The notes beneath the pieces are model-generated. The model saw only the letters and a list, made by a program, of their open reading frames with translations, did no database searches and was not told where the DNA came from. Below, one piece after another: positions 4,344-52,796 of a stretch of 64,000 nt of DNA (position 1 is the first letter of the stretch; each line of letters starts with the position of its first letter). The position numbers and the translations under genes are program-made. The DNA is taken from positions 124,001 to 188,000 of IMG/VR virus record IMGVR_UViG_3300032331_003609; one strand, written 5' to 3'.

Positions 4344-4373
4344 GAAACTTTTTAACTATATTTGTATAGTATA
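4344..4373 (+). promoter_or_regulatory. Overlapping ECF-type (GAAACTT-N16-TAGTATA) and Bacteroidota -7 (TATATTTG, 4357-4364) promoters
   Basis: Both motifs are present 11-20 nt upstream of the 4385 start. Confidence 0.6.
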
Positions 4374-4384
4374 CTTAAAAAAAG

Positions 4385-4636
4385 ATGTCAGAGAGTAAAA
4401 AAACCTATATTGTATCAAAAGATCTTATTGAAAAGATCGTTGATTTTTTAGAAAACCCGTTCGATAACACAAAAGAATCTATAGAGATTCTTAAAAGCAA
4501 AGATTCTTTTACTGAAGATGAGATCAACAAAATAGTTGCTCTGTTAGGTAAATTTCCTGCTTATTCGGTATACCCAATAATTGATTTATTTAAAGGAAAT
4601 TTAAAAGTAGAAGAAATTGACCAGCAACAAGAATAA
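4385..4636 (+). CDS. Hypothetical protein
   Basis: 83-aa ORF, first gene after the promoter, overlaps the next gene. Confidence 0.7.
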   Translation: MSESKKTYIVSKDLIEKIVDFLENPFDNTKESIEILKSKDSFTEDEINKIVALLGKFPAYSVYPIIDLFKGNLKVEEIDQQQE

Positions 4637-5090
4637 CTACAAAGAACACACAGAAAAAGATTGTCAGGATCTAAAACAATTTAAATTAGATACTGTATAT
4701 CTAAAAATGGCTCAAGTGTGGGCATCTAACTCGCATTGCAAAAGAAGCCAGGTTGGATGTTTGGTGGTAAAAGATAAAACAATTATTTCCGATGGATATA
4801 ACGGAACTCCAACAGGATTTCCTAATATTTGCGAAGATGAAGATAATCAAACACTATCTTCTGTTCTTCATGCAGAAGCTAATGCTATAACAAAACTGGC
4901 AATGAATACAGTTACCTCAAACGGAAGTACAATGTACGTTACGCTATCTCCATGTTTTGATTGTTCGAAACTTATCATTCAATCCGGGATTAAAAGAATA
5001 GTCTTTTCTGAATTGTACAGAAAGATAGATTCTTTAGATTTGCTTAACCAGGCAGGTATTGAAATAATTTATATTAACTTACAACCCTAA
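4617..5090 (+). CDS. cd: dCMP deaminase (ComEB/Cd family)
   Basis: S.C.RSQVG, GYNG, HAEANAI and PC..C zinc motifs. Confidence 0.93.
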   Translation: MTSNKNNYKEHTEKDCQDLKQFKLDTVYLKMAQVWASNSHCKRSQVGCLVVKDKTIISDGYNGTPTGFPNICEDEDNQTLSSVLHAEANAITKLAMNTVTSNGSTMYVTLSPCFDCSKLIIQSGIKRIVFSELYRKIDSLDLLNQAGIEIIYINLQP

Positions 5091-5102
5091 ACCCAACACG
5101 AG

Positions 5103-5726
5103 ATGGCAAAAAGCATTCAAGACTTAGCAGAAAAATTTTTAGAAACAACTTTAGAGAAAGATTTTAAATATCTCTATGATCGAATTAAGCCTGGTTTATT
5201 AAATCATTGTAAATCTATTCTTATAGACGAAGAAATTGCTCAGGATGCAGTTTCAAAAACATTTGAAAAGATTTGGGTAAAGGTTGCTCAGTATGATCCA
5301 GCAAGGGGGAATTTTTCGACTTGGGCTTATAACATAGCTAGAAATGAATCCCTTCTTATAAAAAAGAATTCCAAAAAATTTACTCCTTTGGTTTATGAAT
5401 CAGTTGAACTGGAGGGGAGAGATTATGACGAATTCATTCCACTGTCAGACATTACGCCTGAAAGTATTTTTTCAGAGCCTGAATGGGAAATAAATAATAA
5501 AGAGGGTGGATTCGATGATTTATATGAAGTTGTATTGGAAAAGATGGAGCATTTACCAGCAATTTATAAAGATATCTTAATGGACAGAGAAATTCACAAA
5601 ATGAAGTATCAAGAAATTGCTGATAAATATAGTATGAAAAAAAGAGCAATAGCTACAAGGATCAGAAGAGCAAGAATTAAGATAAGAGAAATGTTCCCGG
5701 GTATTAAATTAAATTTTATTGACTAA
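5103..5726 (+). CDS. ECF-type (sigma70 group 4) RNA polymerase sigma factor
   Basis: Region 2 AQDAVSKTFEKIW...FSTWAYNIARN; region 4 LP..YKDIL..R.....KYQEIA......IATRIRRAR. Confidence 0.88.
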   Translation: MAKSIQDLAEKFLETTLEKDFKYLYDRIKPGLLNHCKSILIDEEIAQDAVSKTFEKIWVKVAQYDPARGNFSTWAYNIARNESLLIKKNSKKFTPLVYESVELEGRDYDEFIPLSDITPESIFSEPEWEINNKEGGFDDLYEVVLEKMEHLPAIYKDILMDREIHKMKYQEIADKYSMKKRAIATRIRRARIKIREMFPGIKLNFID

Positions 5727-6198
5727 TATGAAATCACTATTCTTTAGCATCTTTAAAATATTTGGCGTCATTAAGGACATCAAAAATTACATCTTTCTTA
5801 GAAAAATAATCAAGGACCAAATGATGGATTCTCCTCTTTGGGTTAAGAATAATCTAAGGGTTGATTGGATAGGAAGAATCTATACTGTAGTAAATCTTCC
5901 TCCTGAAGTAACAATGGCTCCTGATCTTCCAAAAGAACTCTGGCCTGCTTATTTAATAGATCAATCCAAAGGGTTGAACGAATATTTAACTTCATTAAAT
6001 TTACATGAGATTATAATTCCGGAATATAAAGAAATTCCGGATTCAACATCTTATCTTCTAGTTTACTATCCTTATTTTAGATCGTTTACAAAATGGTGGA
6101 TCTATACAAGGATAATTTTCTGGACATCCGTTGTATTAATACAACACTACACCCACTGGTTCTCTAACACGTATCAGTGGATAATATCACATTTTTAG
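5719..6198 (+). CDS. Hypothetical protein with C-terminal TM helix
   Basis: 159 aa; hydrophobic WWIYTRIIFWTSVVLI segment. Confidence 0.7.
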   Translation: MTNMKSLFFSIFKIFGVIKDIKNYIFLRKIIKDQMMDSPLWVKNNLRVDWIGRIYTVVNLPPEVTMAPDLPKELWPAYLIDQSKGLNEYLTSLNLHEIIIPEYKEIPDSTSYLLVYYPYFRSFTKWWIYTRIIFWTSVVLIQHYTHWFSNTYQWIISHF

Positions 6199-6201
6199 AA
6201 T

Positions 6202-6949: not shown

Positions 6950-6980
6950 GAAACTTAACCCCCACAGAAACTAAAATATA
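6950..6980 (+). promoter_or_regulatory. ECF-type promoter GAAACTT-N15-TAAAATATA
   Basis: Seen directly upstream of the 6996 start. Confidence 0.5.
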
Positions 6981-6995: not shown

Positions 6996-7448
6996 ATGTC
7001 AGAAGAAGTTTTACAAGAAGTAGTTATTGACGAAGCTAAAGTTGCTGCGTCCCAAAAAGCATTGGATGCTAAAATGGCAGAACTTTCTAATAAAGTTTAT
7101 GCAGTTTCGATGAACGCGGCATCATTGGAGGTATATTTCCAGGTAATTGAATCTATCAAATGGAAGGGTAAAGAAGGTTTAGGAATTTTAGAAATCACTA
7201 AGAAATTGAGCGAGGTAAAGGATAAGGGGATTTCAAATGATGCTATCTTTTTAAATGCTCTTACGATTGAAGCGAGTCATTATTTTTTAAACAGATACGA
7301 ATCGCAAGGAAGTAATACTGCAGAGGGATTTATTGATTTATTCAAAAAAATAGAGCAAGCGTTATCAGCAGTTTCGCAAGACAATAAAGATTTAGAGGAT
7401 CTTAATAAGGATTTAGCAGCTGCCCAACAAGGATTAGAAGCTGTATAA
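6996..7448 (+). CDS. Hypothetical alpha-helical/coiled-coil protein
   Basis: 150-aa ORF with A-rich leader and downstream terminator. Confidence 0.75.
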   Translation: MSEEVLQEVVIDEAKVAASQKALDAKMAELSNKVYAVSMNAASLEVYFQVIESIKWKGKEGLGILEITKKLSEVKDKGISNDAIFLNALTIEASHYFLNRYESQGSNTAEGFIDLFKKIEQALSAVSQDNKDLEDLNKDLAAAQQGLEAV

Positions 7449-7479: not shown

Positions 7480-7507
7480 AGGCCTACTTTATTAAGTGGG
7501 CCTTTTT
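7480..7507 (+). terminator. Intrinsic terminator
   Basis: AGGCCTACTT-tatt-AAGTGGGCCT (one G-U pair) followed by TTTT. Confidence 0.7.
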
Positions 7508-17429: not shown

Positions 17430-19679
17430 ATGGATAGAATTAATTTCGACGATAATCTGTCACAGATAAAAATGGAAAAGGCTAAAGCTGCTGCCACTCT
17501 TTTAAATGAGAGCTGGGGTGGTAACGGAGGTTTTATTCCAGGCGCTGCTGGCTCGTATACAGACGGTTTACAAAAAGAGATAGCTAATATGTCTACAGAA
17601 GACAGAAACCTAGCTAAACCTTCTTTTTCTGTTGGTGTGTTAGAAACAGCAATGGCTTTAAACAATACATCATTCACTGAATTGCCAGAAGCTAAGGTCC
17701 TGGTTGAGAAATACATCAATCATGCAGCGGTTAAAGGAATTTCTGAGGCTTACCTGATTGAATCAATGATCTCTGAATTGGAAAACTTTGCTTGGGAAAA
17801 GAATGTAAAATCTGCATTAAATACCCTAAAGAAAACATTTGAAAGCAATAGAAGAGAAATTGAAGTAGCAAAGGCTATTGAAGAAATTAATAGATCAGCA
17901 GGTAGAGATTTATTTTCTGGTATTGTTGAATCAATGAGAAATTGGTTAGCAGCAGATCAAAGAATTTCAGAAAGTCTTTTAAGAGACCTTAAGAAATGGG
18001 GATTTAACCCAACAGTTAGAAATCTAGTTGAGAAGGTATCTTATTTGGAGAATAACAGCTCAAGCAGATTTAGTATTAAAGTAGCATCTGATACATGCAG
18101 TGTCAGCCCTATTATTGCTCCAAGTTTAGTTACTGAAAGTTCTTCAATATTTGTAACATCTGATAGATTCTTCAGAGCTACAGAAGAAGGAGTATCTGTA
18201 ATGGAAAGAGCAGAAGCTTCAAAACTTCCTGGTAAATTCTTAAATGCAGTTTTAGCACTTTCTAATCCAAATGTTAAAGTTAACGAAAGTGGTTTAGATC
18301 TTTATATAGGTAAAAATAAAATCTCTGTTGTTTTTGAAAGTGAAACAGATACTAAAAATATTTTCTTCAACGGTAAAAGAGTAGCAGAAGATAAATTAGG
18401 ATTCACATTATCTTTTGAATTAAGAAATGGCTTCCAAGGATCTGCTAATGCAATTGAAAATGCAGTTCAAGTAGTAGAAGCTGCTAACTATCTTTCTGAA
18501 ATTGATTTTGGTAAAAAGATCTCTTCTAAAATCTACGAAGGAGTAGAAGCTAACGTATTTAAATTTGGCGAAAAGGTTTACGTTCATAAAGTAAACCCTG
18601 CTATGAGAAAGAACGAGCTTTTAGAAGGAAACGGCAATCAAGCAGTTAATATAGTAAAAGAATTCTTAGGATTTGATCTTTCTGAATCTATGACAGAAGT
18701 TTTAGAAAAAGAAGAAAGAATCTTAGCTATCATGAAGAATGACAAAGAATCTATCAAGAAAAACCTATCTATCGTAGAGAGCGAAATGAACAAGATTGCT
18801 AAAGCACTTGAATCAAATCCTTCTTTACAAAATTCTGATGAAATTAAAGAAGCTCAAGTAATGCTTAGCAATGAGTCTACTGCATTAAAATCTAAATGGA
18901 ATCAAATCTCAGTTGAGATTGAAAGATTCGAAAAAGGAGCTAAGAAGGTATCTAAAATCTCTGAAAACGAAGGATATGGTATTAACACCGATGTTAAAAT
19001 AAACAGAAACGGAGAAAAAGGTAGAGTTGTAGGTGTAAATGGTAATTCTAAAACATACACAGTTATGTTTGAGAATGGAAAAACCGGAGAATTTTTCTTC
19101 AATGATGTAACTGATATCTCAGATGAAATTAACAACATTGAATTACAACCAGTTAATGATTTACAAGAAGAGGAAACAAACGAATCAGCTGAAGCTAACT
19201 TAGCAGAAGCACCGGACACAACTGCAGCAGGATCAGCAAAAGATATTGACGATTTAAATGCTCACAATTTAGCAAATTTAGATGTTAAAGGTGGTAAGAA
19301 ATTAAAAGAAGATCCAAAAGGAACTTCTGGTAAACATGAATTAGCAACTGCTCCTGAGCACACAGCAAAGACAGGAAAGAAATTCGTTCAAAAAGAAAAG
19401 AATGCTAACTTAGCTGATGCACCACATAGCACATCTGCTGGATCAGCAAAAGATATTGAAGATTTAAAAGCTCACAATTTAGCAATTATCGAGTCTCAAA
19501 AGAATGCTAACTACGAAAAAGCACCTTCTGGCAAGAAAGAGAAAGTTAAAAAATTAGTTCTTGGTAAAAAAGGAACTTTGGCTAAAGCACCAGGTAATAG
19601 CAAGCATAACGGTAAAGGTGATCACGAGCCTCTTAATAGAGCAACCCTATCTAAAGCACCGTCTACAAAAAAAAAGTAA
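17430..19679 (+). CDS. Large head-associated protein (prohead core / internal head-like), 749 aa
   Basis: Late promoter; many L/I/V-x-E sites (LLNES, IVES, VTES, ISEN); coiled coil, SH3/KOW-like segment, C-terminal LA.AP repeats; lies in the head module. Confidence 0.7.
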   Translation: MDRINFDDNLSQIKMEKAKAAATLLNESWGGNGGFIPGAAGSYTDGLQKEIANMSTEDRNLAKPSFSVGVLETAMALNNTSFTELPEAKVLVEKYINHAAVKGISEAYLIESMISELENFAWEKNVKSALNTLKKTFESNRREIEVAKAIEEINRSAGRDLFSGIVESMRNWLAADQRISESLLRDLKKWGFNPTVRNLVEKVSYLENNSSSRFSIKVASDTCSVSPIIAPSLVTESSSIFVTSDRFFRATEEGVSVMERAEASKLPGKFLNAVLALSNPNVKVNESGLDLYIGKNKISVVFESETDTKNIFFNGKRVAEDKLGFTLSFELRNGFQGSANAIENAVQVVEAANYLSEIDFGKKISSKIYEGVEANVFKFGEKVYVHKVNPAMRKNELLEGNGNQAVNIVKEFLGFDLSESMTEVLEKEERILAIMKNDKESIKKNLSIVESEMNKIAKALESNPSLQNSDEIKEAQVMLSNESTALKSKWNQISVEIERFEKGAKKVSKISENEGYGINTDVKINRNGEKGRVVGVNGNSKTYTVMFENGKTGEFFFNDVTDISDEINNIELQPVNDLQEEETNESAEANLAEAPDTTAAGSAKDIDDLNAHNLANLDVKGGKKLKEDPKGTSGKHELATAPEHTAKTGKKFVQKEKNANLADAPHSTSAGSAKDIEDLKAHNLAIIESQKNANYEKAPSGKKEKVKKLVLGKKGTLAKAPGNSKHNGKGDHEPLNRATLSKAPSTKKK

Positions 19680-19930
19680 ACACAATTTCTGAACATAGAA
19701 AAGAGTTCGTTTCCGAAGGTATAGGAAGCGAACTCTCTTTTTTTGCAGAGGATCTGACAAAGACCATAGGTAAATTGAAGGAATTAGAAACAACCAGTCA
19801 CTCTAACAGTAAGATAGGATTGAAGACCATACAAGACAGCATAAAAAAACTTGTGGCTTTAGAGGAAGATGTAACTAGACAAATGGAAACATTAGAAGGT
19901 CATTTCTCTCAAGAAAATAATACAGACTAA
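19676..19930 (+). CDS. ATG-less 84-codon open frame, candidate -1 frameshift extension of 17430..19679
   Basis: VNTISEHRKEFVSEGIGSELSFFAEDLTKTIGKLKELETTSHSNSKIGLKTIQDSIKKLVALEEDVTRQMETLEGHFSQENNTD*; frame open from 19655; fills the whole gap before gp55. Confidence 0.55.
   Translation, partial: VNTISEHRKEFVSEGIGSELSFFAEDLTKTIGKLKELETTSHSNSKIGLKTIQDSIKKLVALEEDVTRQMETLEGHFSQENNTD
19702..19744 (+). terminator. 13-bp stem-loop plus T-run (terminator or attenuator) inside the candidate extension frame
   Basis: AGAGTTCGTTTCC-gaaggtata-GGAAGCGAACTCT (one G-U pair) then CTTTTTTT. Confidence 0.65.
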
Positions 19931-19935
19931 ACCAA

Positions 19936-20292
19936 ATGGAGTATGTTAAAAACAAAGATCTAAAAAGAGCGATATTAGAATCAAAAGAGAATGGAAAATT
20001 AACCGCAGAAACGGTTAAAATGTTTACTTTAATAGTAAATGGTCTTTCAAAAACAAAATCCTATCGGGATATTGAAGATAAAGAAGATTGCATAGCATTT
20101 GGAATGGAGGATTTAATTAAATATTGGGACAGATTTGATCCAGCTAAATCCGATAATCCATTTGCATTTATTTCACAAATTGCCAAAAACGGAATGCAAA
20201 AAGGTTGGAAAAAAATACATTCAACCAGGTCTATAAAAACCATCCCCTTTTCTAGACTTACAAGGGATGATAATCAAAATTATAATGTCTAA
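19936..20292 (+). CDS. gp55: Late-transcription sigma factor, T4 gp55-like
   Basis: YVKNKDL...LIVNGLS...SY...EDCI..G.E.LIKY...FDP.KSDNPFAFISQIA.NG matches the gp55 pattern (YVNNKEL...LIAEGLS...NFD..K..NPHAYITQ). Confidence 0.85.
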   Translation: MEYVKNKDLKRAILESKENGKLTAETVKMFTLIVNGLSKTKSYRDIEDKEDCIAFGMEDLIKYWDRFDPAKSDNPFAFISQIAKNGMQKGWKKIHSTRSIKTIPFSRLTRDDNQNYNV

Positions 20293-20779: not shown

Positions 20780-21351
20780 TGGATTTTAAAATAGAAATAA
20801 GAGATGCTATAGAGAAAGCTGGATCCCCTGCAAAATTAGCGGAGGAAAGTTTTTTGAATTATTCAAAGAACTATGCAGTACTTACTAGTTCAGAGTCGCT
20901 TAGGAGTTTAGTTCAGGGAAAGATCTACACATTTTATTATGATTCAGATATTAAGGCAGATAAGGGATTTGTTAATAGAAGACCCGTAGTGTTCTTTGAA
21001 TCAAAAGAGATAACCCCATCAAAAAGCATAATAAAAGGAATAGACATGATCTTGCTAAGTCCAAAAGACAGAAAGAATTTCTTCATCCGATTACATTCTA
21101 TTTATGGTAAAATCATGGATCAGAACGAAAAAAGAGATAGATCTGCGCACATGCCTTTAAGATTTGACCCCTCAGTATTAGAAACTTTAATGGGAGGTAT
21201 CAAGTATAATCATGCATACACCGGATACAAAATGGAAAAAATAAAAGGATTAAAGGAAATAGAAAGAGAGGAGTGGAGATATTTAGTCTATCTAAACACC
21301 AAATCTATTGAGGGGGCTGATTTGAACGATATATACAACAAATATCAATAA
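20779..21351 (+). CDS. gp2: DNA end protector, T4 gp2-like
   Basis: GKIYTFYYD...RPVV...G..M..L.PK.R pattern; synteny gp4-gp2-portal. Confidence 0.65.
   Translation: MDFKIEIRDAIEKAGSPAKLAEESFLNYSKNYAVLTSSESLRSLVQGKIYTFYYDSDIKADKGFVNRRPVVFFESKEITPSKSIIKGIDMILLSPKDRKNFFIRLHSIYGKIMDQNEKRDRSAHMPLRFDPSVLETLMGGIKYNHAYTGYKMEKIKGLKEIEREEWRYLVYLNTKSIEGADLNDIYNKYQ
21328..21335 (+). promoter_or_regulatory. Late promoter GATATATA inside the gp2 3' end
   Basis: 15 nt before the portal-1 ATG. Confidence 0.55.
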
Positions 21352-22943
21352 TGGCAGGATTTTTAGGAGATAATAGGAGCAATCCATTTTTTAGTAACGT
21401 TCTAAATAACCTTAGAAAAATAGGTTCTTTTGGAATGAGCTATGGTGACATGGTTGTTAAAAACTCCCAAGCGGTAGGTACTACCGAGGCAATGTTCTTA
21501 AAACAGGGCGGAATTCAGGATGAAAATTTCTTATATGCTTTAAGAAAGGCAGATACCACAGCTAAACAATACATAGCTTATTTTGATAGGGATTACATCA
21601 ATAAGAAAACATATCTTAGAAGCTTTGCACTTAATCCTGAAATAGAATTTATTTTAGATACCGTTTGCGACGAAGCTATTGTATATGATGATAAAAACTT
21701 CTTTTCATATTTTGTATCAACAGATATCAAGGGTATTGGCGAAGAGATGGAACAGCAAATACAAGACAGATATAAAGAAATTTATAGCTTATTTGGCTTT
21801 AATGAAGGAATCTCTGCATGGCACTTTTTTAGGAACTTTTTAATTGATGGGATATTAGCATTTGAAATCATATTTGACTCGAGGGGAAAGAATATTATAG
21901 GATTTAAAGAATTAGATCCTGCATCCTTATTGCCTTCCGTCGAAAAACAACTTGACGGTAATTTCGTAGAATGCTGGATTCAATACCCAGACAATCCCTC
22001 TTTATCTAGAAAATTGTACGATTCACAGATTATTTATATTTCATACGCTAAGGGAAATACAACAACAAGAGTAAGTTATGTAGAAAGATTGATTAGATCT
22101 TTTAATCTATTAAGAATTATGGAGCATACCAGAGTAATTTGGAATGTTATGAATTCATCATATAGAATGACAATGACTGTTCCAGTAGGAACAAAATCCC
22201 CGCAAAAAGCAAAACAATCATTAGCTGAGCTGATGAGCATCTATAAAGAAGATATTAGTCTTAATCAAGATAGCGGTGAGCTTTTTGTGAACGGAAAACC
22301 AAACATTCAGTTCTTTAAAAATTATCTGATGCCGTCTACTCCCAACGGAACACCTGATATAACACCATTAGCAGGAAGCGGAGATGCAACACCTTTTAGC
22401 GATTTAAAAGCTTTAGCATATTTTGCAGATAAGCTTAAATTAGATTCTAAAATTCCATATTCAAGATTTGATAGAGAGGATAGAGGTACACAGGGTACAT
22501 TCAGTGGTAACGCAGAAGGATTAGATCAAGAAGAGATAAGATTCTTTAAATTCATTACAAGATTAAGATCCATCTATCAAGATATACTTCTAAAACCTTT
22601 ATGGATACAATTTTGCTTGGATCATCCAGAGCATAAAAGGGATTTTATGGTTAAGAGCCAATTCGGTTTAGATTATGTTAAAGATAATTCTTTTGCTGAA
22701 ATAAAATATATGGAGATCCTCAATGCAAGAAAAGATCAAGTAACTAAAATTGCAGGTCTTTTAGATGCTGACGGAACACCGTATTTCTCGTTGAATTATG
22801 TACTAGACAAGTATCTTGGAATGACCGATGATGATAAGATAGCTAACGAGAAAGCAAAAGAGGCAGCAGAGAAGAAGAAAAAAGAGAAGGAGAAAGAAGC
22901 AGGAGAAGCAGGAGAAGCACCAGAAGGAGAATTTAAACTTTAA
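21351..22943 (+). CDS. gp20: Portal vertex protein, T4 gp20-like, paralog A
   Basis: PEIEFILD..CDEAIVYD, FR..LIDG.L.F, ELDP, SY.ERLIRSFNLLRIME...VIW, KA.Q....LM..YK, EEIRFFKFI.RLR. Confidence 0.9.
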   Translation: MAGFLGDNRSNPFFSNVLNNLRKIGSFGMSYGDMVVKNSQAVGTTEAMFLKQGGIQDENFLYALRKADTTAKQYIAYFDRDYINKKTYLRSFALNPEIEFILDTVCDEAIVYDDKNFFSYFVSTDIKGIGEEMEQQIQDRYKEIYSLFGFNEGISAWHFFRNFLIDGILAFEIIFDSRGKNIIGFKELDPASLLPSVEKQLDGNFVECWIQYPDNPSLSRKLYDSQIIYISYAKGNTTTRVSYVERLIRSFNLLRIMEHTRVIWNVMNSSYRMTMTVPVGTKSPQKAKQSLAELMSIYKEDISLNQDSGELFVNGKPNIQFFKNYLMPSTPNGTPDITPLAGSGDATPFSDLKALAYFADKLKLDSKIPYSRFDREDRGTQGTFSGNAEGLDQEEIRFFKFITRLRSIYQDILLKPLWIQFCLDHPEHKRDFMVKSQFGLDYVKDNSFAEIKYMEILNARKDQVTKIAGLLDADGTPYFSLNYVLDKYLGMTDDDKIANEKAKEAAEKKKKEKEKEAGEAGEAPEGEFKL

Positions 22944-31459: not shown

Positions 31460-32163
31460 TGTCCATTGATAGAATAAGAAGAATACCATTCCCAGAAAAT
31501 ATAACTAATAATAATTCTCTCACTATTGATTCAGAAAAATTTAAAAACAGAGATATCGGGGAGTACAGTAAATTTGTCAATAAGCATTCTAATGAATCAT
31601 TTATAGTTTGTGCATGTGGCGTTTCTCTAAACGATTATGACAATTTTGATAACCACATAACTATTGGGGTAAATGATGCAGGTAAGAAAGTCTGGTGTAA
31701 ATATCTGGTTGTAGTTAACGAGCCAAGCACCTTTAAATTTAAAAGATGGCCAGACGTTCAAAGTAATAACTCAGAATTTGTTTTTACCCACATGAAAACT
31801 TTACCTATTGATAATCCGGAAGGAAGAATAATAAAGGTAAATCTCGGAAAATATGAAGGCGTAGATCTAGACAATTATGGATTTATAGATTACACTACCA
31901 ATTCACCATATATGGCTATAGTTATAGCATATCAAATGGGAGCTAGAAAAATAGCATTGGTTGGAGTCGATTTTACAATGAATCACTTCTTTGGTGAAAC
32001 AGGAAAACACCAGATAATGAGAGAAATAGAGAGGGTGAAGGAACAATATTCGGTTCTTGGAAAAGCATTAACGGAAAAAGGTATTAAAATAGCAAACCTG
32101 TCAAAAGACAGTCTTATTGAGTCGTGGCCCAAAATGACACTGCAAGAATTCGAAACTATATAG
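31459..32163 (+). CDS. GT29/Maf-type (DUF115-like) Rossmann sugar-transferase-like protein
   Basis: IVCACGVSL, TIGVND, TNSPYMAI.IAYQMGARKIALVGVDF. Confidence 0.7.
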   Translation: MSIDRIRRIPFPENITNNNSLTIDSEKFKNRDIGEYSKFVNKHSNESFIVCACGVSLNDYDNFDNHITIGVNDAGKKVWCKYLVVVNEPSTFKFKRWPDVQSNNSEFVFTHMKTLPIDNPEGRIIKVNLGKYEGVDLDNYGFIDYTTNSPYMAIVIAYQMGARKIALVGVDFTMNHFFGETGKHQIMREIERVKEQYSVLGKALTEKGIKIANLSKDSLIESWPKMTLQEFETI

Positions 32164-32180
32164 GGTTTAAAAATTATAAT
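32152..32180 (+). promoter_or_regulatory. ECF-type promoter GAAACTA-N16-TATAAT
   Basis: Ends 4 nt before the 32185 ATG, so the transcript may be leaderless. Confidence 0.45.
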
Positions 32181-32184: not shown

Positions 32185-32952
32185 ATGAGCGATCAAAAGA
32201 CGGGATTATTAATAAGATTTCCCCTAAGCCCAAAGAAAGGAAAAAAATCCACATACACAGTTTCTTTCTACGGCTTTATGGAAAGAAAAATAGCTGAGGG
32301 AATTAATCTGGGGTACAAATGTTTTATCTTCGAAGTATCTGACGATGATTTCGATGTCCTTGATTTTGAGGTACATGGGGATATTAGACAATCCTTAAAT
32401 TCTTACATACGGGAAGGAATAAGATTGGCAATCTATATAAAGGTAAAAAAATATCTAACATCCGATTCTATTGACGAAATAAATGAAGCACACAGTCAAA
32501 TAACTACGTGCTTGAATTTTGTTAAAAACTTTACTATATCAGATCCTCAAGAATTTCCTATCATTTTACATGTTGGAGGTGCTAAAGGGGATAGGAGAGG
32601 TACCATGGAAGATTTTTGTAAAAAAATAGAAAAATTATTTAATCCAGACGATATCCTGAGTCTTGCTGTTGTTAATGACGAGAAGCCAAGTCTTTTCTCG
32701 GTCAAAGATCTTCTTCCCGGCGTATTTTATAAAATAAGAATTCCTATAGTTTTTAGATCAACGTCATATCCAACTAATCAAGGGAACCTGACACTTAATG
32801 AATCACTATTCCTAGCAGCTTCCACGTGGAAGAGAACGATCAATCCTATTTTTGTTTACCTTCCAGGGAACACCCAAATCAACGGGGATCAAACTAAGCC
32901 ATTTGGTTTAGAATTAGATTTTGTCTTTGATAACAGATTACCCGAACCATAG
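32185..32952 (+). CDS. UV-damage endonuclease (UvsE/UVDE) homolog lacking several catalytic residues
   Basis: IILHVGGAKGD...F......LAVVNDEKPSLFSVKDL..GV...IRIPIVF aligns to UVDE, but ENDD is VNDE and DYHHH is RSTSY. Confidence 0.75.
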   Translation: MSDQKTGLLIRFPLSPKKGKKSTYTVSFYGFMERKIAEGINLGYKCFIFEVSDDDFDVLDFEVHGDIRQSLNSYIREGIRLAIYIKVKKYLTSDSIDEINEAHSQITTCLNFVKNFTISDPQEFPIILHVGGAKGDRRGTMEDFCKKIEKLFNPDDILSLAVVNDEKPSLFSVKDLLPGVFYKIRIPIVFRSTSYPTNQGNLTLNESLFLAASTWKRTINPIFVYLPGNTQINGDQTKPFGLELDFVFDNRLPEP

Positions 32953-32978
32953 CATTTTATTGTCTCGAGGATTTCTTT

Positions 32979-32986
32979 TATATTTG
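32979..32986 (+). promoter_or_regulatory. Bacteroidota-type -7 box TATATTTG
   Basis: 17 nt before ATG 33004. Confidence 0.6.
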
Positions 32987-46143: not shown

Positions 46144-46164
46144 TTTTACATTTTTTATCTAGGG

Positions 46165-46196
46165 GAAACTTTAGTACATTTGGGATATAAAATATA
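46165..46196 (+). promoter_or_regulatory. Overlapping ECF-type (GAAACTT-N16-TAAAATATA) and Bacteroidota -7 (TACATTTG, 46175-46182) promoters
   Basis: Both motifs precede the 46203 ATG. Confidence 0.6.
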
Positions 46197-46743: not shown

Positions 46744-48177
46744 ATGTGTGGAATACTAATTGCTCATAATCCCTCCGAGGAAAGAATTAAGTCAATATCG
46801 CACAGGGGTATCGAATATTCCACACACTCAGATGCATCGGGATTAACCCTATGCCATCACAGATTGCCTATCCAAACAGCAATAGGTGACGGTTGGATTC
46901 AACCGGTCGAGATATCGAAAGACAAGTACCTTCTATTCAATGGCGAAATTTTTAATTATCCCACGGAGCTATATGATTCAGATACTGCGTATCTAGCTAG
47001 TCTTTTTTCTACCTGCCTAGACTTTTCATCACTTGAGATGTTTAGTGCTCTCTACGAGCCCCATATTAAGAGCTGGGATGGTTTCTGGGCTATTTGTCTG
47101 GTTGATATGAAGACAAAGAACGTTATTTGTTTTACAGACCCTCTAGGTAAGAAGTGCCTATACTATAATGATCTTGGAGAAATCTGCTCTGAAATGAAAG
47201 GACTTATTAATAGTGCTTCTTTCTTAGATAGATCCTTTATGGGCGGTGTAAGAAAATGGGGGTATGTTCCTAATGAATCTACCCCATTTGAAAACATCCA
47301 GAAGATCCGACCAAACTACTTTTATCAATGGAATTTTGCTGCTCCAGACTTCAAGAAGCTATATGGTCCCTATTTCTCATTTAAACCCCCCAAATTTGAG
47401 TTTAATTCTGAGGATGAGATGTTAGATTGGGTTTGGAACAAAGTTGAAGCAGCGACAAAGAATAGACTGTTAAGCTTGGACTATCCTATATCCATCCTGC
47501 TTTCAGGAGGTCTGGATTCATCTATCATTGGTGGGCTTCTTCTTAAGCTAGGTGCGGATGTTAGTTGGTATACCATAAACAACGGACCGGACAATGATTA
47601 TGTCAGAGAATGCGAGAATTATTGGGGTATTAAAGTAAACCAATTGGAATATACAATGAACGAAGATAGTATTAATCTGGATGAATTGTATTTTAAGTGG
47701 AATGAATCTCCTATAGATTTAGGCAGCGTGGTACCACAGTACCTGCTATTTGATGCGATTAAAAAAGGAACAGACACTAGAATAGTCCTATCAGGGGACG
47801 GAGCAGATGAAATGTTTGGAGGATATAGAAGGATAGATGAGTACGACTCACAAGGATCTGATGTTTTCCATGAATTAACATATTACCATTTACCAAGACT
47901 TGATAAAATGAGCATGGCACACACATTAGAGCTTAGAAATCCTTTTCTGAATTTAGAGCTTCTTCAAATGGCACTAAATCTTCCGATGGATTTAAGGAAA
48001 CATAAGACCATTCTTAAGAAAGCATTCAAAGGATTGGTTCCAGATTCTGTTATAGAAAGAAAAAAGCATCCATTAAAGAATGAAAGAATAGTGAAAGATC
48101 CTATGGAATATAGAATAGAAGCTATTGAAAGCTTTAAAAAGGGATACAGCGATTTTTTAGAAAGAGGAGAATATTAA
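46744..48177 (+). CDS. asnB: Asparagine synthase-like glutamine-dependent amidotransferase (AsnB family)
   Basis: N-terminal MCGI, HRG, H.RL.I, FNGEIFNY, LLSGGLDSS, LSGDGADEMFGGY, LELRNPFL. Confidence 0.93.
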   Translation: MCGILIAHNPSEERIKSISHRGIEYSTHSDASGLTLCHHRLPIQTAIGDGWIQPVEISKDKYLLFNGEIFNYPTELYDSDTAYLASLFSTCLDFSSLEMFSALYEPHIKSWDGFWAICLVDMKTKNVICFTDPLGKKCLYYNDLGEICSEMKGLINSASFLDRSFMGGVRKWGYVPNESTPFENIQKIRPNYFYQWNFAAPDFKKLYGPYFSFKPPKFEFNSEDEMLDWVWNKVEAATKNRLLSLDYPISILLSGGLDSSIIGGLLLKLGADVSWYTINNGPDNDYVRECENYWGIKVNQLEYTMNEDSINLDELYFKWNESPIDLGSVVPQYLLFDAIKKGTDTRIVLSGDGADEMFGGYRRIDEYDSQGSDVFHELTYYHLPRLDKMSMAHTLELRNPFLNLELLQMALNLPMDLRKHKTILKKAFKGLVPDSVIERKKHPLKNERIVKDPMEYRIEAIESFKKGYSDFLERGEY

Positions 48178-49661
48178 TAAAGCTCAATTCCTGCTAGAGA
48201 ATCACCTTTTGCATTAAGTGGTGAATAATCTTCTGGTTCATCCGTCAAAAGAAACGTCTTACTTGCATCGACAACTAAACCAGCTATTCCCATAAATCCC
48301 CTGTTAATTAGTATCGGAGTACTTTTGTTAGTTCTATCAACAATAGAAAATTTAACCTTCTTGTAAACCATTTCCCCGAATTCAATATCTAAAAGAATAA
48401 CTGGCCTTTTATCAGTTTGATCCCCAACTTCTGCATGGGAATATTCCATTATTCTGTTACTAAAGGATTTACCCCCAACTGTCCAATTTAAAAATCCATC
48501 AACCTCTTCTGAAAAATCTGCATGAAGAGAACACGCAATAGATCCGTTGCCAGTATCTAATTTACCTATAAATTTGCCAACCCCCTTGATATCAAAGCTC
48601 TCTCTAAATCCCACCATTTTTCGAGGATAATTCCAGTTCTTTTTATCAAGTATAAAATCTAAGATAATTCCTGTTACGTCAAGACCCGTTGCTTTTTCTA
48701 TGCCGTCAGTTCCTGGTGATGCGTTTACTTCTAAAACATATGGTATACCAGTATTTTTTCCAATAATAATATCAACACCACACCACGAGCATTCAGTTGC
48801 TTTAGCAGCTCCTATTGCTATTTTTTCTATCTCTTTAGATATTTCTACTGCCTCTGCTACCCCACCTAAAGACACGTTTGTTCTAAAGTCATTCTCTATT
48901 CTGTGTCTTTTCATAGAGGCTATAATTGTATAATCATCCCCGTCGCCTGTAGAATTTCTAGATCCAACTACGTGTATTCTTAAATCAAAGTCAGCTTCTA
49001 TTTTTTCTTGGACTATTAATTCAGTTTCTGGCGAAAGCTTCCATATTGTTTGTAAAGTTGAGAAAAGAGACGTTTTAGAATCTATCTGAAATACACCTAT
49101 TCCTTTGGTGCCGCTTAATGTTTTTACTACAATAGGGTATTTTCCCCCGATTTTACTCATAGCATTTTCTATATCATCCTCTGATGATATTAAAGCAGTT
49201 TTTGGTGTCGGTATTCCTTTTTCTTGGAGTTTTTGAACAGTGTCTAACTTATCTTCACAAAGAAGTACAGATCTTGGTGAATTCACTGATACAAATCCAA
49301 GAGATTCAAGTTTTTCAAAAAATTTAACAGCTGCTGTTGAGTTTATTGATGATCTTCTAGCAAGTATTGCTGTATTTTTAATATCAATCTCATACTTGTT
49401 GTTGCTTCCTTTATTTCTAATAAAGAAGCTTCCTGTTTCACTTTTTTCGATTTCCCCCTGCGATGTGTTAATTATGATGCATTTAAATCCTAAAGAAGTG
49501 GATTTCTCCATCATTTTTTTAACAGTTGGAGCAAGATAGTTTTTTCTTGATTCTAATTTGGTTGTAAGAATCACAAGGGAAATAGGCTTTTTTGAGCCTA
49601 TCTTTAGATTCTCAGCTCCCTGAAAAACAAAATCATCTTCTTTGGTCAATAAATTATCCAT
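48174..49661 (-). CDS. rimK: RimK-family ATP-grasp ligase fused to C-terminal retropepsin-like (RimB/ATP-dependent Zn-protease family) domain
   Basis: DKL.T...L...GIP.PKT, P.VVK...G..GIGV, DLR..V.G, FR.NVS.GG, GVDII, LEVN.SPG; then KLDTGNG...SLHA...RPVI.LD..F...FSIVDR...ILINR.FM. Confidence 0.9.
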   Translation of the reverse strand: MDNLLTKEDDFVFQGAENLKIGSKKPISLVILTTKLESRKNYLAPTVKKMMEKSTSLGFKCIIINTSQGEIEKSETGSFFIRNKGSNNKYEIDIKNTAILARRSSINSTAAVKFFEKLESLGFVSVNSPRSVLLCEDKLDTVQKLQEKGIPTPKTALISSEDDIENAMSKIGGKYPIVVKTLSGTKGIGVFQIDSKTSLFSTLQTIWKLSPETELIVQEKIEADFDLRIHVVGSRNSTGDGDDYTIIASMKRHRIENDFRTNVSLGGVAEAVEISKEIEKIAIGAAKATECSWCGVDIIIGKNTGIPYVLEVNASPGTDGIEKATGLDVTGIILDFILDKKNWNYPRKMVGFRESFDIKGVGKFIGKLDTGNGSIACSLHADFSEEVDGFLNWTVGGKSFSNRIMEYSHAEVGDQTDKRPVILLDIEFGEMVYKKVKFSIVDRTNKSTPILINRGFMGIAGLVVDASKTFLLTDEPEDYSPLNAKGDSLAGIELY

Positions 49662-50624: not shown

Positions 50625-51323
50625 TTATCCTAGTCCTAAAAGACTTAATATTCCAGTATTAGTACTACCTGTTCCGTCGGTCGATTTGGCTGATGTTTTA
50701 GCTGCAGTAGCTAAATCTTTTTCTGAGAATTTTCCGCCTCCAAATATACTTTTGAATGATGTTCCTTCCCCACAAACTATTCCCTCTAATTTAGTTTCTA
50801 GCATAGTTGCAAAAGCGGTAGAGTTTATATAGGTAGTTAATGCCTCTCTTGTTGAAGCTACAAAAGTACCTCCTAAACCAGATTCAAAATTAATGTTTAT
50901 TCCTAATCCTCTAGAAAGTATAAGTGAGATAGCTTTTTCTTCTATTGTTTCTGTTAATCCTAATGTTATTGCTTTTGTCCAATATTTACAAGATCCTGCC
51001 CCGAAATAACTACCAATGTGCATAAATGAGATATTTTCCACTATATTCTTTGCAAATTCACTCATAAACCCACCGTCGTTTGGTAATCCGAATTTGTCCA
51101 AAAGCCATCCAGCAGCATAGTTTTTTAGTCTATCTTCAAATCCACCCATTAATTTACCGCCTAGACCGCTAATTAAATCCCAAAGGCCTTCATTTATTTG
51201 ATCTACTGATTCACCTTTGTGCAGCATATCATTATAATGAGCTTCTAAACCTTCCACTATTCTGAAATATTCTTCGTCTGTTACATTAACCTTTGTAAAT
51301 TCTGAATATTTGATGACTTTCAT
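50625..51323 (-). CDS. Putative internal head / membrane-active protein (true start MKVIKYSEF at 51323)
   Basis: GATATATA 17 nt upstream of this ATG; amphipathic Gly-rich helices (GLWDLISGLGGKLMGG; GILSLLGLG). Confidence 0.75.
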   Translation of the reverse strand: MKVIKYSEFTKVNVTDEEYFRIVEGLEAHYNDMLHKGESVDQINEGLWDLISGLGGKLMGGFEDRLKNYAAGWLLDKFGLPNDGGFMSEFAKNIVENISFMHIGSYFGAGSCKYWTKAITLGLTETIEEKAISLILSRGLGININFESGLGGTFVASTREALTTYINSTAFATMLETKLEGIVCGEGTSFKSIFGGGKFSEKDLATAAKTSAKSTDGTGSTNTGILSLLGLG

Positions 51324-51340
51324 TTCTACTTTATTTTTAT

Positions 51341-51379
51341 TATATATCTCTTCTATAATAATAAAACCAAAGATATATA
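51341..51379. promoter_or_regulatory. Divergent pair of GATATATA late promoters (51341-51348 minus, 51372-51379 plus)
   Basis: Back-to-back exact motifs between divergent genes. Confidence 0.7.
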
Positions 51380-51400
51380 ACCATATAATCAAGTCACCCA

Positions 51401-51973
51401 TTGAAACACCTTCTAAGTTATAGAGATTTATTTGAAAGTACCTCTGCTGGATCCCAGGATAGGGGATCTTCAGATGTGCCTCCGTTCAAGTTTGCTATAA
51501 ACTTCGACCCTAGACTAGGATACACTAAAAACGATTTTGTGCAGGATTTGACTGAGATCTATTTGGGATATCCATTAAAGGACCGTAGAGATCTTATGGA
51601 TGCTGTTTTTAAAAGCGCTGGTGTTTTTAAAATATCAGACATTCAGGATCTTCCGCAGGACAGGGTAGATAAATTAATCAAAAGCGTAGAAGAGTATATG
51701 GAAAGTAAATCCGAGTATAAATTAGAAATACTTCCAGACGGGTTTATTCTTTGCTTTGAGGGGCTTAAACACCGAAAAAGAACTTGTGATGTTTATTACT
51801 CCCCGACGGAAAGAAAAGTAAAAATATCATATACCGACGCCTATCCAGAAAATGAAGAGATAATAATTGGGATAGATGGATTTTCTCCTATATCAGTAGG
51901 AGTTGATAATAACGATTTTATGGCGACGGTTGAAAAGTGCGATGATTATGCTAAAAAGTCTAATCCCTTATAG
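51401..51973 (+). CDS. Hypothetical protein with capsid-targeting-like N-terminus (TTG start)
   Basis: MKHLLSYRDLFE|S; late promoter 21 nt upstream. Confidence 0.7.
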   Translation: MKHLLSYRDLFESTSAGSQDRGSSDVPPFKFAINFDPRLGYTKNDFVQDLTEIYLGYPLKDRRDLMDAVFKSAGVFKISDIQDLPQDRVDKLIKSVEEYMESKSEYKLEILPDGFILCFEGLKHRKRTCDVYYSPTERKVKISYTDAYPENEEIIIGIDGFSPISVGVDNNDFMATVEKCDDYAKKSNPL

Positions 51974-52696
51974 CATAGAAAGATAATCCCTATAATTATT
52001 AACTATAAATTCTATTGACTTGTCTTTCATAACCTCAAATGATATTTCATCTTCGCCCTTGGCCTTTTGCAAATCCACAATAATAAAACAATCGGTATAC
52101 TTAGAAAAGTTTTTGATCTCCTTTTCAAAAAAGTTATAGATTTTTCTGTCAGACTTTGTATACTCGGGTAACGGGTCCATCAATTCGCTTAACAAAAGAC
52201 CTACCTGCTCAACCTCATCAACTTTAATAATAGAAAACAACCAAGAGTAAATTTTCATTTTCTTGTTCTTGTTATTTCTCATAACAACATATCCGCGGTC
52301 TTTAGAGAAAAAATCCTCATTGTGTATTCTGAACTCTAAAGATTTTTCTATTTCTTCGAGGTAGGGATTTAACTTCTCCATAAAATTGTCTAACACCTCT
52401 AATGTTCCGTCTAATATAAGTGGAACTTCTTCATTCTCGTCGACAAGTGTTATTAGTTCATGGGTTTTCTCTATTTCGTCCTGGGTCATATTTTTAACAG
52501 TCTTATCACTAAGTCTATTAAACTTTTGAAAACTTTTTACATCATTGTAAACCCTGGTTATTTTTTGGATTTGCTCTGAGTATTTTTTCTTGCCAAGATC
52601 AGTTTCCACAGATTGCAGAAAATCCATCAGAATATAATACTTATGCTCTGCATCTATAGGATCTTGTAAAAACCAATATGGTTGTAAATTTTTCAT
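51968..52696 (-). CDS. Conserved hypothetical protein
   Basis: 242 aa; WF...PID.EHK.YIL..FLQ N-terminal motif. Confidence 0.75.
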   Translation of the reverse strand: MKNLQPYWFLQDPIDAEHKYYILMDFLQSVETDLGKKKYSEQIQKITRVYNDVKSFQKFNRLSDKTVKNMTQDEIEKTHELITLVDENEEVPLILDGTLEVLDNFMEKLNPYLEEIEKSLEFRIHNEDFFSKDRGYVVMRNNKNKKMKIYSWLFSIIKVDEVEQVGLLLSELMDPLPEYTKSDRKIYNFFEKEIKNFSKYTDCFIIVDLQKAKGEDEISFEVMKDKSIEFIVNNYRDYLSML

Positions 52697-52767
52697 TGCT
52701 TACTACTATAATATATAACCCAAAACGTGACGGATTCCTCTCATAAAAAAAATATTTCTCGTTTTTG

Positions 52768-52796
52768 GAAACTTTCCACTAAAACACAACTAAGAT
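52768..52796 (+). promoter_or_regulatory. ECF-type promoter GAAACTT-N16-TAAGAT
   Basis: Upstream of the first glycosyltransferase gene. Confidence 0.45.

What the first reader, a model, noticed from the sequence alone, without database searches (positions are those of the whole stretch)
4344..52796. Probable phage ECF-sigma regulon: GAAACTW-N15/16-TA(A/G/T) promoters
GAAACTT/A followed after 15-16 nt by TAAAATATA, TAGTATA, TATAAT or TAAGAT occurs at 4344, 6950, 32152, 46165 and 52768, with a variant GATACTA at 1363. Each copy lies just upstream of a gene start. This resembles ECF -35 boxes (GAAC/GGAACTT class). The 4344 copy heads the operon encoding the phage ECF sigma itself (5103..5726), consistent with autoregulation. 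This would be a middle-transcription tier distinct from T4 MotA/AsiA.
Basis: partly seen in the sequence, partly recalled or inferred. Interest (0 to 1): 0.6.

Follow-up and report, generated by a model that had tools for sequence, protein, structure and literature searches.

The report
Phage ECF-sigma promoter set, conserved
A giant T4-like phage of probable Bacteroidota hosts carries its own ECF-type sigma factor, and a conserved two-part promoter (GAAACTT, 15-16 bases, TAnnAT) sits before that sigma's operon, the late-sigma gene and several DNA-metabolism genes, which points to a three-step sigma cascade in place of T4's MotA/AsiA.

Summary
The motif copies are at the stated coordinates. 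Stricter tests show a real signal.

- GAAACTT occurs 29 times in the 245-kb genome, and 14 copies lie 20-100 nt upstream of a same-strand gene start (1.3 expected).
- A TAnnnT box follows at spacer 15-17 in 11 of 23 upstream copies, against 5 of 50 elsewhere.
- Among 76 related phage contigs that carry the sigma gene, 73 of 73 have the bipartite motif upstream of the sigma operon.
- 61 of 62 have it upstream of the next gene, the copy at window 6950. Both boxes and the spacing are kept while the spacer sequence varies.
- 18 of 19 distinct relatives have it upstream of a T4 gp55-type late-sigma gene (window 19936-20292).

ORF 5103-5726 is a genuine ECF-type sigma with sigma-2 and sigma-4 domains only. 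No MotA or AsiA was found.

Two listed copies (4344, 46165) overlap host-type promoters (CATTTTT-N19-TAyATTTG). The 46165 -35 box is not conserved, and the 1363 variant is degenerate.

The link between this sigma and the motif is inferred, not shown, because no RNA data were listed. I rate it a new variant of a known kind: a phage sigma with its own promoters.

The parts
5103..5726 (+). Phage ECF-type sigma factor gene (207 aa, sigma-2 plus sigma-4 only)
   Evidence: Pfam Sigma70_r2 at 5e-13 and r4_2 at 2e-8. TIGR02937 at 70.3 bits against a cut-off of 42.9. phrog_1740. Closest solved structure is B. subtilis SigW, 5wuq, E 5.7e-6.
4344..4372 (+). ECF-type promoter heading the sigma operon: GAAACTT 4344-4350, 16-nt spacer, TAGTAT 4367-4372
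   Evidence: Both blocks are conserved in 15 relatives while the spacers vary (A1). The motif lies inside the spacer of the host-type promoter at 4331-4364.
4331..4364 (+). Host sigma-A-type (Bacteroidota -33/-7) early promoter: CATTTTT, 19 nt, TATATTTG
   Evidence: The class has a fixed 19-nt spacing at about 11 genome sites. TAnnTTTG is the sigma-A -7 box in flavobacteria (PMC9723704).
4190..4218 (+). Possible second ECF-type promoter inside the 3' end of gene 2600-4327: GAAACAA, 16 nt, TACAAA
   Evidence: A motif at the same relative position (-913 to -1150 from the sigma start) is present in all clades. The GAA-ACT codons are invariant in the distant clade although ACT is only 35% of Thr codons.
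6950..6977 (+). ECF-type promoter of the single-gene unit 6996-7448: GAAACTT 6950-6956, 15-nt spacer, TAAAAT 6972-6977
   Evidence: GAAAC and TAAAA are invariant in 9 phages with a free spacer (A2). 42 of 44 distinct upstream regions of orthologues have the motif, down to 36% protein identity. 61 of 62 loci have it.
6996..7448 (+). 150-aa protein of unknown function, the most consistently motif-preceded gene of the family
   Evidence: No Pfam or PHROG family matched. The atlas search gave no lead. A terminator-like hairpin follows at 7480-7503.
19787..19815 (+). ECF-type promoter 149 nt upstream of the late-sigma gene: GAAACAA 19787-19793, 16 nt, TAAGAT 19810-19815
   Evidence: 18 of 19 distinct relatives have the motif 97-150 nt upstream of the gp55-like gene. 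In one clade it lies in a non-coding spacer after a terminator, as GGAAACTT-N15-TAAAAA.
19936..20292 (+). T4 gp55-type late sigma gene (118 aa, sigma-2 only)
   Evidence: phrog_234 'late sigma transcription factor' at 6.5e-16. Pfam Sigma70_r2 only.
32152..32180 (+). Probable ECF-type promoter before the UvdE-like gene 32185-32952: GAAACTA, 16 nt, TATAAT
   Evidence: The -35 box overlaps the last codons of the upstream gene. Relatives have GAAACAA-N16-TATAAT and GAAACAT-N15-TAGAAA. UvdE Pfam hit at 1.2e-8.
46165..46193 (+). Questionable ECF-type promoter: GAAACTT, 16 nt, TAAAAT, embedded in the sigma-A-type promoter 46149-46182
   Evidence: The -35 box is GGAATTTT in two relatives, while the -7 box and TATAAA are conserved. 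The downstream genes are a P-loop protein and an Asn-synthase-like amidotransferase.
52768..52796 (+). ECF-type promoter before gene 52843-53430: GAAACTT 52768-52774, 16 nt, TAAGAT 52791-52796
   Evidence: GAAACTTTCC and CTAAnATT are invariant in three genomes, including one whose sigma is 59% identical. The spacer varies and its length is kept (A4).
1363..1391 (+). Degenerate copy: GATACTA, 16 nt, TAAAAT, before the baseplate-hub-like gene 1405-2388
   Evidence: Spacing is 14-16 and the -35 box is variable in close relatives. The orthologous site in the distant clade is a canonical GAAACTA-N15/16-TAAAAT-type site (TAAAAT commonest). phrog_150 hit.

Best explanation
The GAAACTT-N15/16-TAnnAT sites are bipartite promoters read by host core RNA polymerase carrying the phage's own ECF-type sigma (5103-5726). 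Sigma-4 would bind GAAACTT at about -35, and sigma-2 would bind (c)TA(A/T)(A/G)AT at about -10.

The proposed order of events is as follows.
1. Host sigma-A reads early promoters of the Bacteroidota type (CATTTTT-N19-TAyATTTG). One of these heads the sigma operon.
2. The ECF sigma then reads its own set of promoters. These include its own operon (positive feedback), the 150-aa gene at 6996, the UvdE-like repair gene, and gene 52843. Elsewhere in the genome they include the gp32 SSB gene, the tRNA cluster and the S21 gene. The set also includes the gene of the gp55-type late sigma.
3. The gp55-type sigma reads the roughly 60 (G/A)ATATATA(A/G) late promoters in front of structural genes.

Shown here: the sigma's family, the motif's enrichment, its orientation bias, its fixed spacing and its deep conservation.
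Inferred: that this sigma reads this motif, the timing of each step, and where transcription starts.
For: - Sigma identity.
- Enrichment and orientation.
- Spacing preference: TA...T at spacer 15-17 in 11 of 23 upstream copies, against 5 of 50 elsewhere and 15% of random intergenic anchors.
- Conservation of both boxes with a variable spacer.
- Distribution in 76 sigma-bearing contigs: 181 + strand hits at four fixed places, 5 - strand hits, and a 2.1% hit rate in random 160-nt windows.
- 73 of 73 loci have the motif upstream of the sigma operon, and 61 of 62 upstream of the next gene.
- 18 of 19 distinct relatives have it upstream of the late-sigma gene.
- The sigma-4 recognition helix and sigma-2 core are invariant between sigmas 59% identical, matching the conserved boxes (A5).
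- At the three sites where both promoter types overlap, the GAAACTW-to-TAnnAT spacing stays 15-16 while its register relative to TAyATTTG shifts by 3 nt. This indicates two independent pairs of boxes.
- The other two candidate readers fit other motifs: host sigma-A fits TAnnTTTG, and the gp55-like sigma has no sigma-4 domain and fits -10-only promoters.
- An AAC-containing -35 box is typical of ECF sigmas, for example B. subtilis SigW with TGAAAC (my own knowledge).
- Precedent: the sigma gene of phiEco32 and 7-11 is read from both host and phage-sigma promoters (PMC4331800).
Against: - There are no transcript data; none was listed.
- The -10 box lacks the CGT element regarded as the ECF signature (PMC9723704).
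- Every comparison locus was chosen because it carries the sigma, so no phage lacking the sigma served as a negative control.
- In the distant clade the copy upstream of the sigma operon lies in coding sequence. So do the window copies at 4190 and 19787, where GAAAC encodes Glu-Thr. Protein-level constraint may explain part of that conservation.
- GAAACTT enrichment is weaker in relative G1 (7 of 40, p 0.0015) and not significant in the partial genome G2 (2 of 14).
- The -35 box at 46165 is not conserved.
Confidence: 0.7

Rival explanations
1. The sites are real bipartite promoters, but they are read by a host factor rather than the phage ECF sigma. Candidates are one of the many host ECF sigmas, or host sigma-A redirected by an unidentified phage protein.
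For: Nothing links the motif to the phage sigma except co-occurrence and elimination. Bacteroidota carry several ECF sigmas, for example 7 in F. psychrophilum. The -10 box resembles a general TATAAT-type box.
Against: The phage encodes a two-domain sigma whose DNA-reading helices are invariant across the family. The motif flanks that gene in every relative. Host sigma-A in this phylum reads TAnnTTTG, which is absent at 6950 and 52768. Dependence on a stress-induced host ECF would be fragile for a conserved step that drives the late-sigma gene.
Confidence: 0.15
2. GAAACTT is the binding site of a non-sigma DNA-binding regulator (an activator or repressor box, MotA-like in logic), and the TAnnAT box is a separate -10 element.
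For: In three host-type promoters GAAACTW lies in the spacer at about -25 relative to the -7 box, next to a recurrent CGrr spacer element. An operator could sit in that position.
Against: There are no MotA or AsiA domains. The spacing to TAnnAT is rigid at 15-16 nt, which matches a -35/-10 pair; T4 MotA boxes sit about 12 nt from the -10 box (my own knowledge). The motif occurs without any host-type boxes at 6950, 52768, genome 89473 and genome 215188. It is strictly oriented: 181 + strand against 5 - strand hits.
Confidence: 0.1
3. The motif is a by-product of AT-rich intergenic composition and of Glu-Thr codons, with no function.
For: The loose pattern is at chance level in the window. GAAAC[AT] is the commonest coding of Glu-Thr.
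Against: The motif is enriched over composition-matched shuffles. It has strand and position bias. Both boxes and the spacer length are conserved while the spacer sequence varies in non-coding DNA, across orthologues as low as 36% protein identity.
Confidence: 0.03

Closest known systems
Phage phiEco32 gp36 (and phage 7-11): a phage-encoded two-domain sigma with its own middle/late promoters
   Same: A phage sigma with a sigma-2-like and a sigma-4-like domain joined by a long linker redirects host core RNAP. The sigma gene itself is reached from both a host-type and a phage-sigma-type promoter (PMC12276001; PMC4331800).
   Different: The gp36 promoters centre on AATGTA at about -11.5 and serve both middle and late genes. 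Here the motif is GAAACTT/TAnnAT, late genes use a separate gp55-type sigma, the phage is a 245-kb T4-like myovirus type, and the host is probably in the Bacteroidota. No gp79-like partner was looked for.
Cellular ECF sigma regulons, e.g. B. subtilis SigW (TGAAAC-N16-CGTA) and E. coli RpoE (GGAACTT-N16-TCAAA); consensus sequences from my own knowledge
   Same: The domain make-up is the same, SigW is the best solved-structure match, the -35 box contains AAC, the spacer is about 16 nt, and a copy lies in front of the sigma's own operon.
   Different: The -10 box is TAnnAT with no CGT. No recognisable anti-sigma was found: the downstream 159-aa protein has no family match. The sigma is encoded by a virus and appears to act as a timing device rather than an envelope-stress sensor.
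T4 middle transcription (MotA/AsiA sigma appropriation)
   Same: It holds the same place in the programme. It lies between host-type early promoters and gp55-type late promoters, and it serves DNA-metabolism genes, the gp32 gene and tRNA genes.
   Different: No MotA or AsiA domains are present. There is no TGCTT box. The upstream box sits at -35 spacing, and a complete alternative sigma is encoded instead.
Bacillus phage SPO1 sigma cascade (gp28, then gp33/34)
   Same: Host sigma-A reads early genes and phage sigmas then take over in sequence (PMC13401047 abstract).
   Different: The sigma families and promoters are unrelated. Here the last step uses a T4 gp55-type minimal sigma.

Membership tests
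ECF (group 4) sigma-70 family protein | Only sigma-2 and sigma-4 domains, about 200 aa, no region 1.1 or region 3 | tested here: met
   207 aa. Pfam hits are r2 (residues 24-83) and r4_2 (residues 143-193) only. TIGR02937 scores 70.3 bits against a cut-off of 42.9.
ECF (group 4) sigma-70 family protein | Membership of a named ECF subgroup (an equivalog or subfamily model above its cut-off) | tested here: not met
   All specific NCBIfam models score below cut-off, for example Sig70_bacteroi1 at 69.5 against 126.4 and SigW at 54.5 against 209.
ECF (group 4) sigma-70 family protein | Co-transcribed cognate anti-sigma factor | tested here: inconclusive
   The overlapping downstream ORF 5719-6198 (159 aa, hydrophobic C-terminus) has no Pfam or PHROG match and gave no atlas lead.
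ECF-type promoter | -35 box containing AAC, with a rigid spacer of about 16-17 nt to the -10 box | tested here: met
   GAAACTT followed by 15-16 nt.
ECF-type promoter | CGT-containing -10 box | tested here: not met
   The -10 boxes are TAAAAT, TAAGAT, TATAAT, TAGTAT and TATAAA. The CGT box is cited as the ECF hallmark in PMC9723704.
ECF-type promoter | Autoregulation: a copy upstream of the sigma's own operon | tested here: met
   Window 4344 (and 4190). 73 of 73 relatives have a copy at -1300 to -700 from the sigma start. This shows sequence presence only; expression was not tested.
ECF-type promoter | Transcription start 5-9 nt downstream of the -10 box that depends on the sigma | not testable with these tools
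   No RNA run was listed for the region.
T4 MotA/AsiA middle promoters | MotA and AsiA genes present, with a TGCTT box at about -30 | tested here: not met
   PF09010, PF09158 and PF09114 gave no match in the record, which is about 86% complete. The motif differs from the MotA box.
T4 gp55-type late promoters | A -10-only AT-rich box with no -35 element, read by a sigma-2-only protein | tested here: not met
   The GAAACTT class has a conserved upstream box. The separate ATATATA class (61 of 90 copies in upstream windows) does fit this family and has a gp55-type sigma available.
Bacteroidota sigma-A promoters (-33 TTTG / -7 TAnnTTTG) | TAnnTTTG box about 19 nt downstream of a T-rich -33 box | tested here: not met
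   The box is absent at 6950, 52768 and 32152. It is present as a second, superimposed promoter at 4331-4364 and 46149-46182.

The most novel reading that the evidence does not exclude
A large family of uncultured freshwater T4-like jumbo phages, probably of Bacteroidota hosts, runs a three-sigma cascade. Host sigma-A drives the phage ECF sigma. The ECF sigma then drives itself, replication and repair genes, tRNA genes and the gene of a gp55-type sigma. The gp55-type sigma drives late genes. An acquired ECF sigma would thus fill the role that MotA/AsiA sigma appropriation plays in T4, using a -10 box (TAnnAT) that is atypical for ECF sigmas.
Probability: 0.55. Interest if true: 0.6.

Novelty: new variant of a known kind. 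Interest (0 to 1): 0.55.

Why it matters
Phage-encoded sigma factors with their own promoters are well known from SPO1 and phiEco32. Jumbo T4-like phages are also known to carry both minimal and fuller sigmas (PMC7824862). What the fuller sigmas read, and how they fit into the T4-type programme, has mostly not been worked out.

This work gives a concrete, testable promoter consensus: sGAAACTTw, 15-16 nt, (c)TA(A/T)(A/G)AT. It also gives a conserved wiring diagram, with the motif in front of the ECF sigma operon and in front of the late-sigma gene, across more than 70 environmental phage contigs.

If confirmed, three things would follow.
- It would show how T4-like phages that lack MotA/AsiA organise middle transcription in a phylum whose housekeeping promoters are unusual.
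- It would provide an ECF sigma with a non-CGT -10 box for specificity studies.
- It would supply an orthogonal sigma/promoter pair for Bacteroidota genetics.

Tried and rejected
- A search for RNA sequencing runs listed none. Read laying was therefore not used, and no transcription start could be checked.
- I considered Flavobacterium phage immuto (MW353175) as a sigma-less negative control. It has no Sigma70_r2 domain at all and is not a T4-type relative, so I dropped it.
- Atlas look-ups for the protein downstream of the sigma (a possible anti-sigma) and for the 150-aa target protein gave only unnamed clusters scoring below 0.85.
- PHROG and Pfam scans left most motif-preceded genes unnamed.
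- Several genome copies in the first 100 kb (5984, 18911, 40531, 40914, 46757, 62448) have no DNA-level orthologue in the two long relatives, so conservation could not be judged.
- Copies at genome 49776, 77909, 232205 and 120340 are not conserved or are explained by coding, and were set aside.
- My first alignment of the 52768 site used wrong coordinates for the third genome (A3). It was redone as A4.
- The costly protein searches, structure prediction and complex prediction were not needed and were not run.

Full report
**Setting.** The window is bases 124001-188000 of a single 244,850-bp virus record with 34% G+C, estimated about 86% complete. Its genes mark it as a T4-type myovirus. They include:
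- portal, head-closure and DNA-end-protector homologues;
- a prohead protease and a major head protein;
- a clamp loader and tail fibres;
- a DNA ligase;
- a gp32-like SSB outside the window.

Several things point to a Bacteroidota host:
- weak DNA similarity to Flavobacterium and Prevotella phages;
- sigma homologues in Prevotella Lak phages;
- A-rich leaders without Shine-Dalgarno boxes;
- host-type promoters carrying the TAnnTTTG box that flavobacterial sigma-A reads (PMC9723704).

**The observation.** The pattern as written is at chance level in the window: 6 found against 5.6 expected. Using position and orientation changes the picture.
- Genome-wide, 14 of 29 GAAACTT copies lie 20-100 nt upstream of a same-strand start. 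The expectation is 1.3 by position (p about 1e-11) and 3.2 +/- 1.9 by composition. The reverse complement occurs 5 times in the same upstream windows.
- In an unbiased k-mer ranking of upstream regions, GAAACTTT is the top 8-mer. GAAACTT is the only 7-mer among the top hits that is not made of A and T alone.
- A TAnnnT box starts 15-17 nt after the 7-mer in 11 of 23 upstream copies. The figures are 5 of 50 for other copies and 15% for random intergenic anchors.
- The composite regex gives 24 hits against 7.0 +/- 2.5 in dinucleotide shuffles. Two relatives give 18 against 6.2 and 10 against 3.2.
- In the window, a version of that regex with looser -10 positions gives nine hits on the + strand and none on the - strand.

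**Three promoter classes.** The genome carries three distinct upstream motifs.
- Class 1 is CATTTTT, exactly 19 nt, TAyATTTG, often with a CGrr element in the spacer. There are about 11 sites, four of them in the window at 4331, 24687, 32953 and 46149. They precede the sigma operon, the ligase/clamp-loader block and other non-structural genes. This matches the Bacteroidota sigma-A -33/-7 architecture.
- Class 2 is (G/A)ATATATA(A/G) with no upstream box. 61 of its 90 genome copies lie in upstream windows. It precedes the portal, protease, tail-fibre and other structural genes, and it is equally enriched in both relatives. It resembles T4 late promoters, and the phage encodes a fitting reader: ORF 19936-20292 is a sigma-2-only protein of the T4 gp55 family.

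**The sigma.** ORF 5103-5726 has Sigma70_r2 and r4_2 domains only, and passes the ECF superfamily model. Its best solved relative is B. subtilis SigW. It is the only protein in the record with a sigma-4 domain. AsiA and MotA domains are absent.

**Comparative evidence within close relatives.** IMG/VR holds many relatives, with sigmas 56-100% identical.
- At the sigma-operon promoter, 15 relatives keep GAAACTTT, TATATTTGT and TAGTATA while the bases between them vary (A1).
- At 6950, nine phages keep GAAAC and cTAAAA with a free 15-16 nt spacer (A2).
- At 52768, three genomes keep GAAACTTTCC and CTAAnATT with the same spacer length but different spacer sequence. One of them has a sigma only 59% identical (A4).

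**Comparative evidence across the whole family.**
- 42 of 44 distinct upstream regions of orthologues of the 6996 gene have the bipartite motif, down to 36% protein identity. In the distant clade the -10 box is mostly TATAAA.
- In 76 distinct sigma-bearing loci (567 kb), the motif hits the + strand 181 times at only four places relative to the sigma gene. It hits the - strand 5 times. Random 160-nt windows match 2.1% of the time.
- 73 of 73 loci have a copy 700-1300 nt upstream of the sigma start, and 61 of 62 have one before the next gene.
- The sigma-2 core and the sigma-4 recognition helix are invariant among sigmas 59-100% identical (A5). This agrees with the unchanged boxes.

**Overlapping promoters.** At three sites (window 4331/4344, window 46149/46165, genome 46741/46757) a class 3 motif sits inside the spacer of a class 1 promoter. 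CATTTTT-to-TAyATTTG is always 19 nt, and GAAACTW-to-TAnnAT is always 15-16 nt, but the two pairs are offset differently (3 or 6 nt between GAAACTW and TAyATTTG). They therefore behave as two independent promoters laid over each other. A sigma gene read first by the host sigma and then by its own product is the arrangement described for phiEco32 and 7-11 (PMC4331800).

In the distant clade the intergenic promoter of the sigma operon is purely host-type. The class 3 copy there lies about 400 nt further upstream, inside the preceding gene. Its GAA-ACT codons are invariant although ACT makes up only 35% of Thr codons. The window has a matching copy at 4190.

**A cascade.** The gp55-type sigma gene is preceded, 97-150 nt upstream, by a class 3 motif in 18 of 19 distinct relatives. 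The window copy is GAAACAA at 19787-19793, 16 nt, then TAAGAT at 19810-19815. In the window's clade this lies in translated-looking sequence. In another clade it lies in a non-coding spacer after a terminator, as GGAAACTT-N15-TAAAAA. That argues for selection on the DNA motif itself.

Other class 3 copies precede:
- the gp32-like SSB gene (genome 236660);
- a UvdE-like repair gene (window 32152);
- a cluster of 11 tRNA genes at genome 89569-91309 (motif at genome 89473, conserved in a relative);
- a ribosomal protein S21 gene (genome 18911).

This gene content is what one expects of a middle class. The simplest model is host sigma-A, then the ECF sigma, then the gp55-type sigma.

**Limits.**
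- No transcript data were available; none was listed. Start sites, timing and the sigma-motif link are therefore inferred.
- The -10 box is TAnnAT, not the CGT box typical of ECF promoters.
- All comparison loci contain the sigma, so there is no sigma-less control.
- The 46165 -35 box is GGAATTTT in two relatives, so that site may be only a host-type promoter.
- At 32152 the -35 box overlaps the last codons of the upstream gene.
- The 1363 variant has a drifting -35 box and spacing in close relatives. Its orthologue in the distant clade is canonical, so it may be a decayed copy.
- GAAACTT enrichment is weaker in relative G1 and not significant in the partial genome G2.

**Comparison with known systems.**
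- In mechanism it is closest to phiEco32 gp36, a two-domain phage sigma with its own promoters (PMC12276001), and to autoregulated cellular ECF regulons.
- In position within the programme it parallels T4 MotA/AsiA middle transcription, whose components are absent here.
- Jumbo T4-like phages are already known to encode both minimal and fuller sigmas (PMC7824862).
- I found no paper describing an ECF sigma with its promoters in a T4-like Bacteroidota phage. That search covers only the held library.

**Verdict.** The motif is a real, deeply conserved bipartite promoter class. Its assignment to the phage ECF sigma is the best-supported reading, at about 0.7 confidence. It is a new variant of a known kind and of moderate interest.

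Noticed in passing
window 1003, 2574, 7514, 17340, 17401, 21328, 29022, 34534, 37845, 41805, 43760, 51372, 53464, 63975 (+); 49686, 50357 (-): (G/A)ATATATA(A/G) boxes lie 11-40 nt before ATGs of structural and other genes, with no -35 box. Genome-wide, 61 of 90 ATATATA copies are in upstream windows, and the motif is equally enriched in two relatives. These are probably T4-late-type promoters read by the gp55-like sigma.
   Followed up: partly
window 19936-20292: A 118-aa sigma-2-only protein of the T4 gp55 late-sigma family (phrog_234), about 14 kb from the ECF sigma gene.
   Followed up: yes
window 4331-4364, 24687-24720, 32953-32986, 46149-46182: Host-type promoters CATTTTT-N19-TAyATTTG with a recurrent CGrr element about 13 nt upstream of the -7 box. 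The spacing is fixed at 19 nt at about 11 genome sites.
   Followed up: partly
window 19662-19930: Gene 17430-19679 ends ACA AAA AAA AAG TAA, which contains the A AAA AAG slippery heptamer at 19670-19676. The -1 frame stays open for 85 codons (19676-19930) and encodes a conserved EFVxExxGxEL peptide across a hairpin at about 19704-19745. The A-run and the open -1 frame are kept in relatives, except in the clade with a terminator there. This is a candidate -1 frameshift extension, although the hairpin is 27 nt from the slip site.
   Followed up: partly
window 21351-22943 and 22947-24680: Two adjacent genes both match the portal protein family phrog_213 (6e-65 and 5e-59). This looks like a tandem portal duplication.
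   Followed up: no
window 52797-52811: An imperfect palindrome TGTTATCTATTAACA lies directly after the -10 box of the 52768 promoter. It is a perfect palindrome in relative G1 and a different palindrome (TTTAC-GAA-GTAAA) in G2. It could be an operator or a 5' RNA hairpin kept by compensatory change.
   Followed up: no
L005 42-466 and 473-15637 (genome 80042-95637): The phage carries a tmRNA gene and 13 tRNA genes. A GAAACTT-N15-TAAAAA motif at genome 89473 sits 96 nt before the main tRNA cluster and is conserved in relative G1.
   Followed up: partly
window 7480-7503: A terminator-like hairpin with a T-run closes the single-gene unit 6996-7448. It is flanked by two ATATATA boxes (7474 and 7515).
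   Followed up: no
window 46744-48177 and 48174-49661 (-): An asparagine-synthase-like amidotransferase and an RimK-like 'ribosomal protein S6 glutaminyl transferase' homologue. A ribosomal protein S21 gene lies at genome 18947-19141. Together these are translation-related auxiliary genes.
   Followed up: no
window 5719-6198: A 159-aa ORF overlaps the end of the sigma gene and has a hydrophobic, Trp-rich C-terminus and no family match. By position it is a possible anti-sigma or membrane partner.
   Followed up: partly
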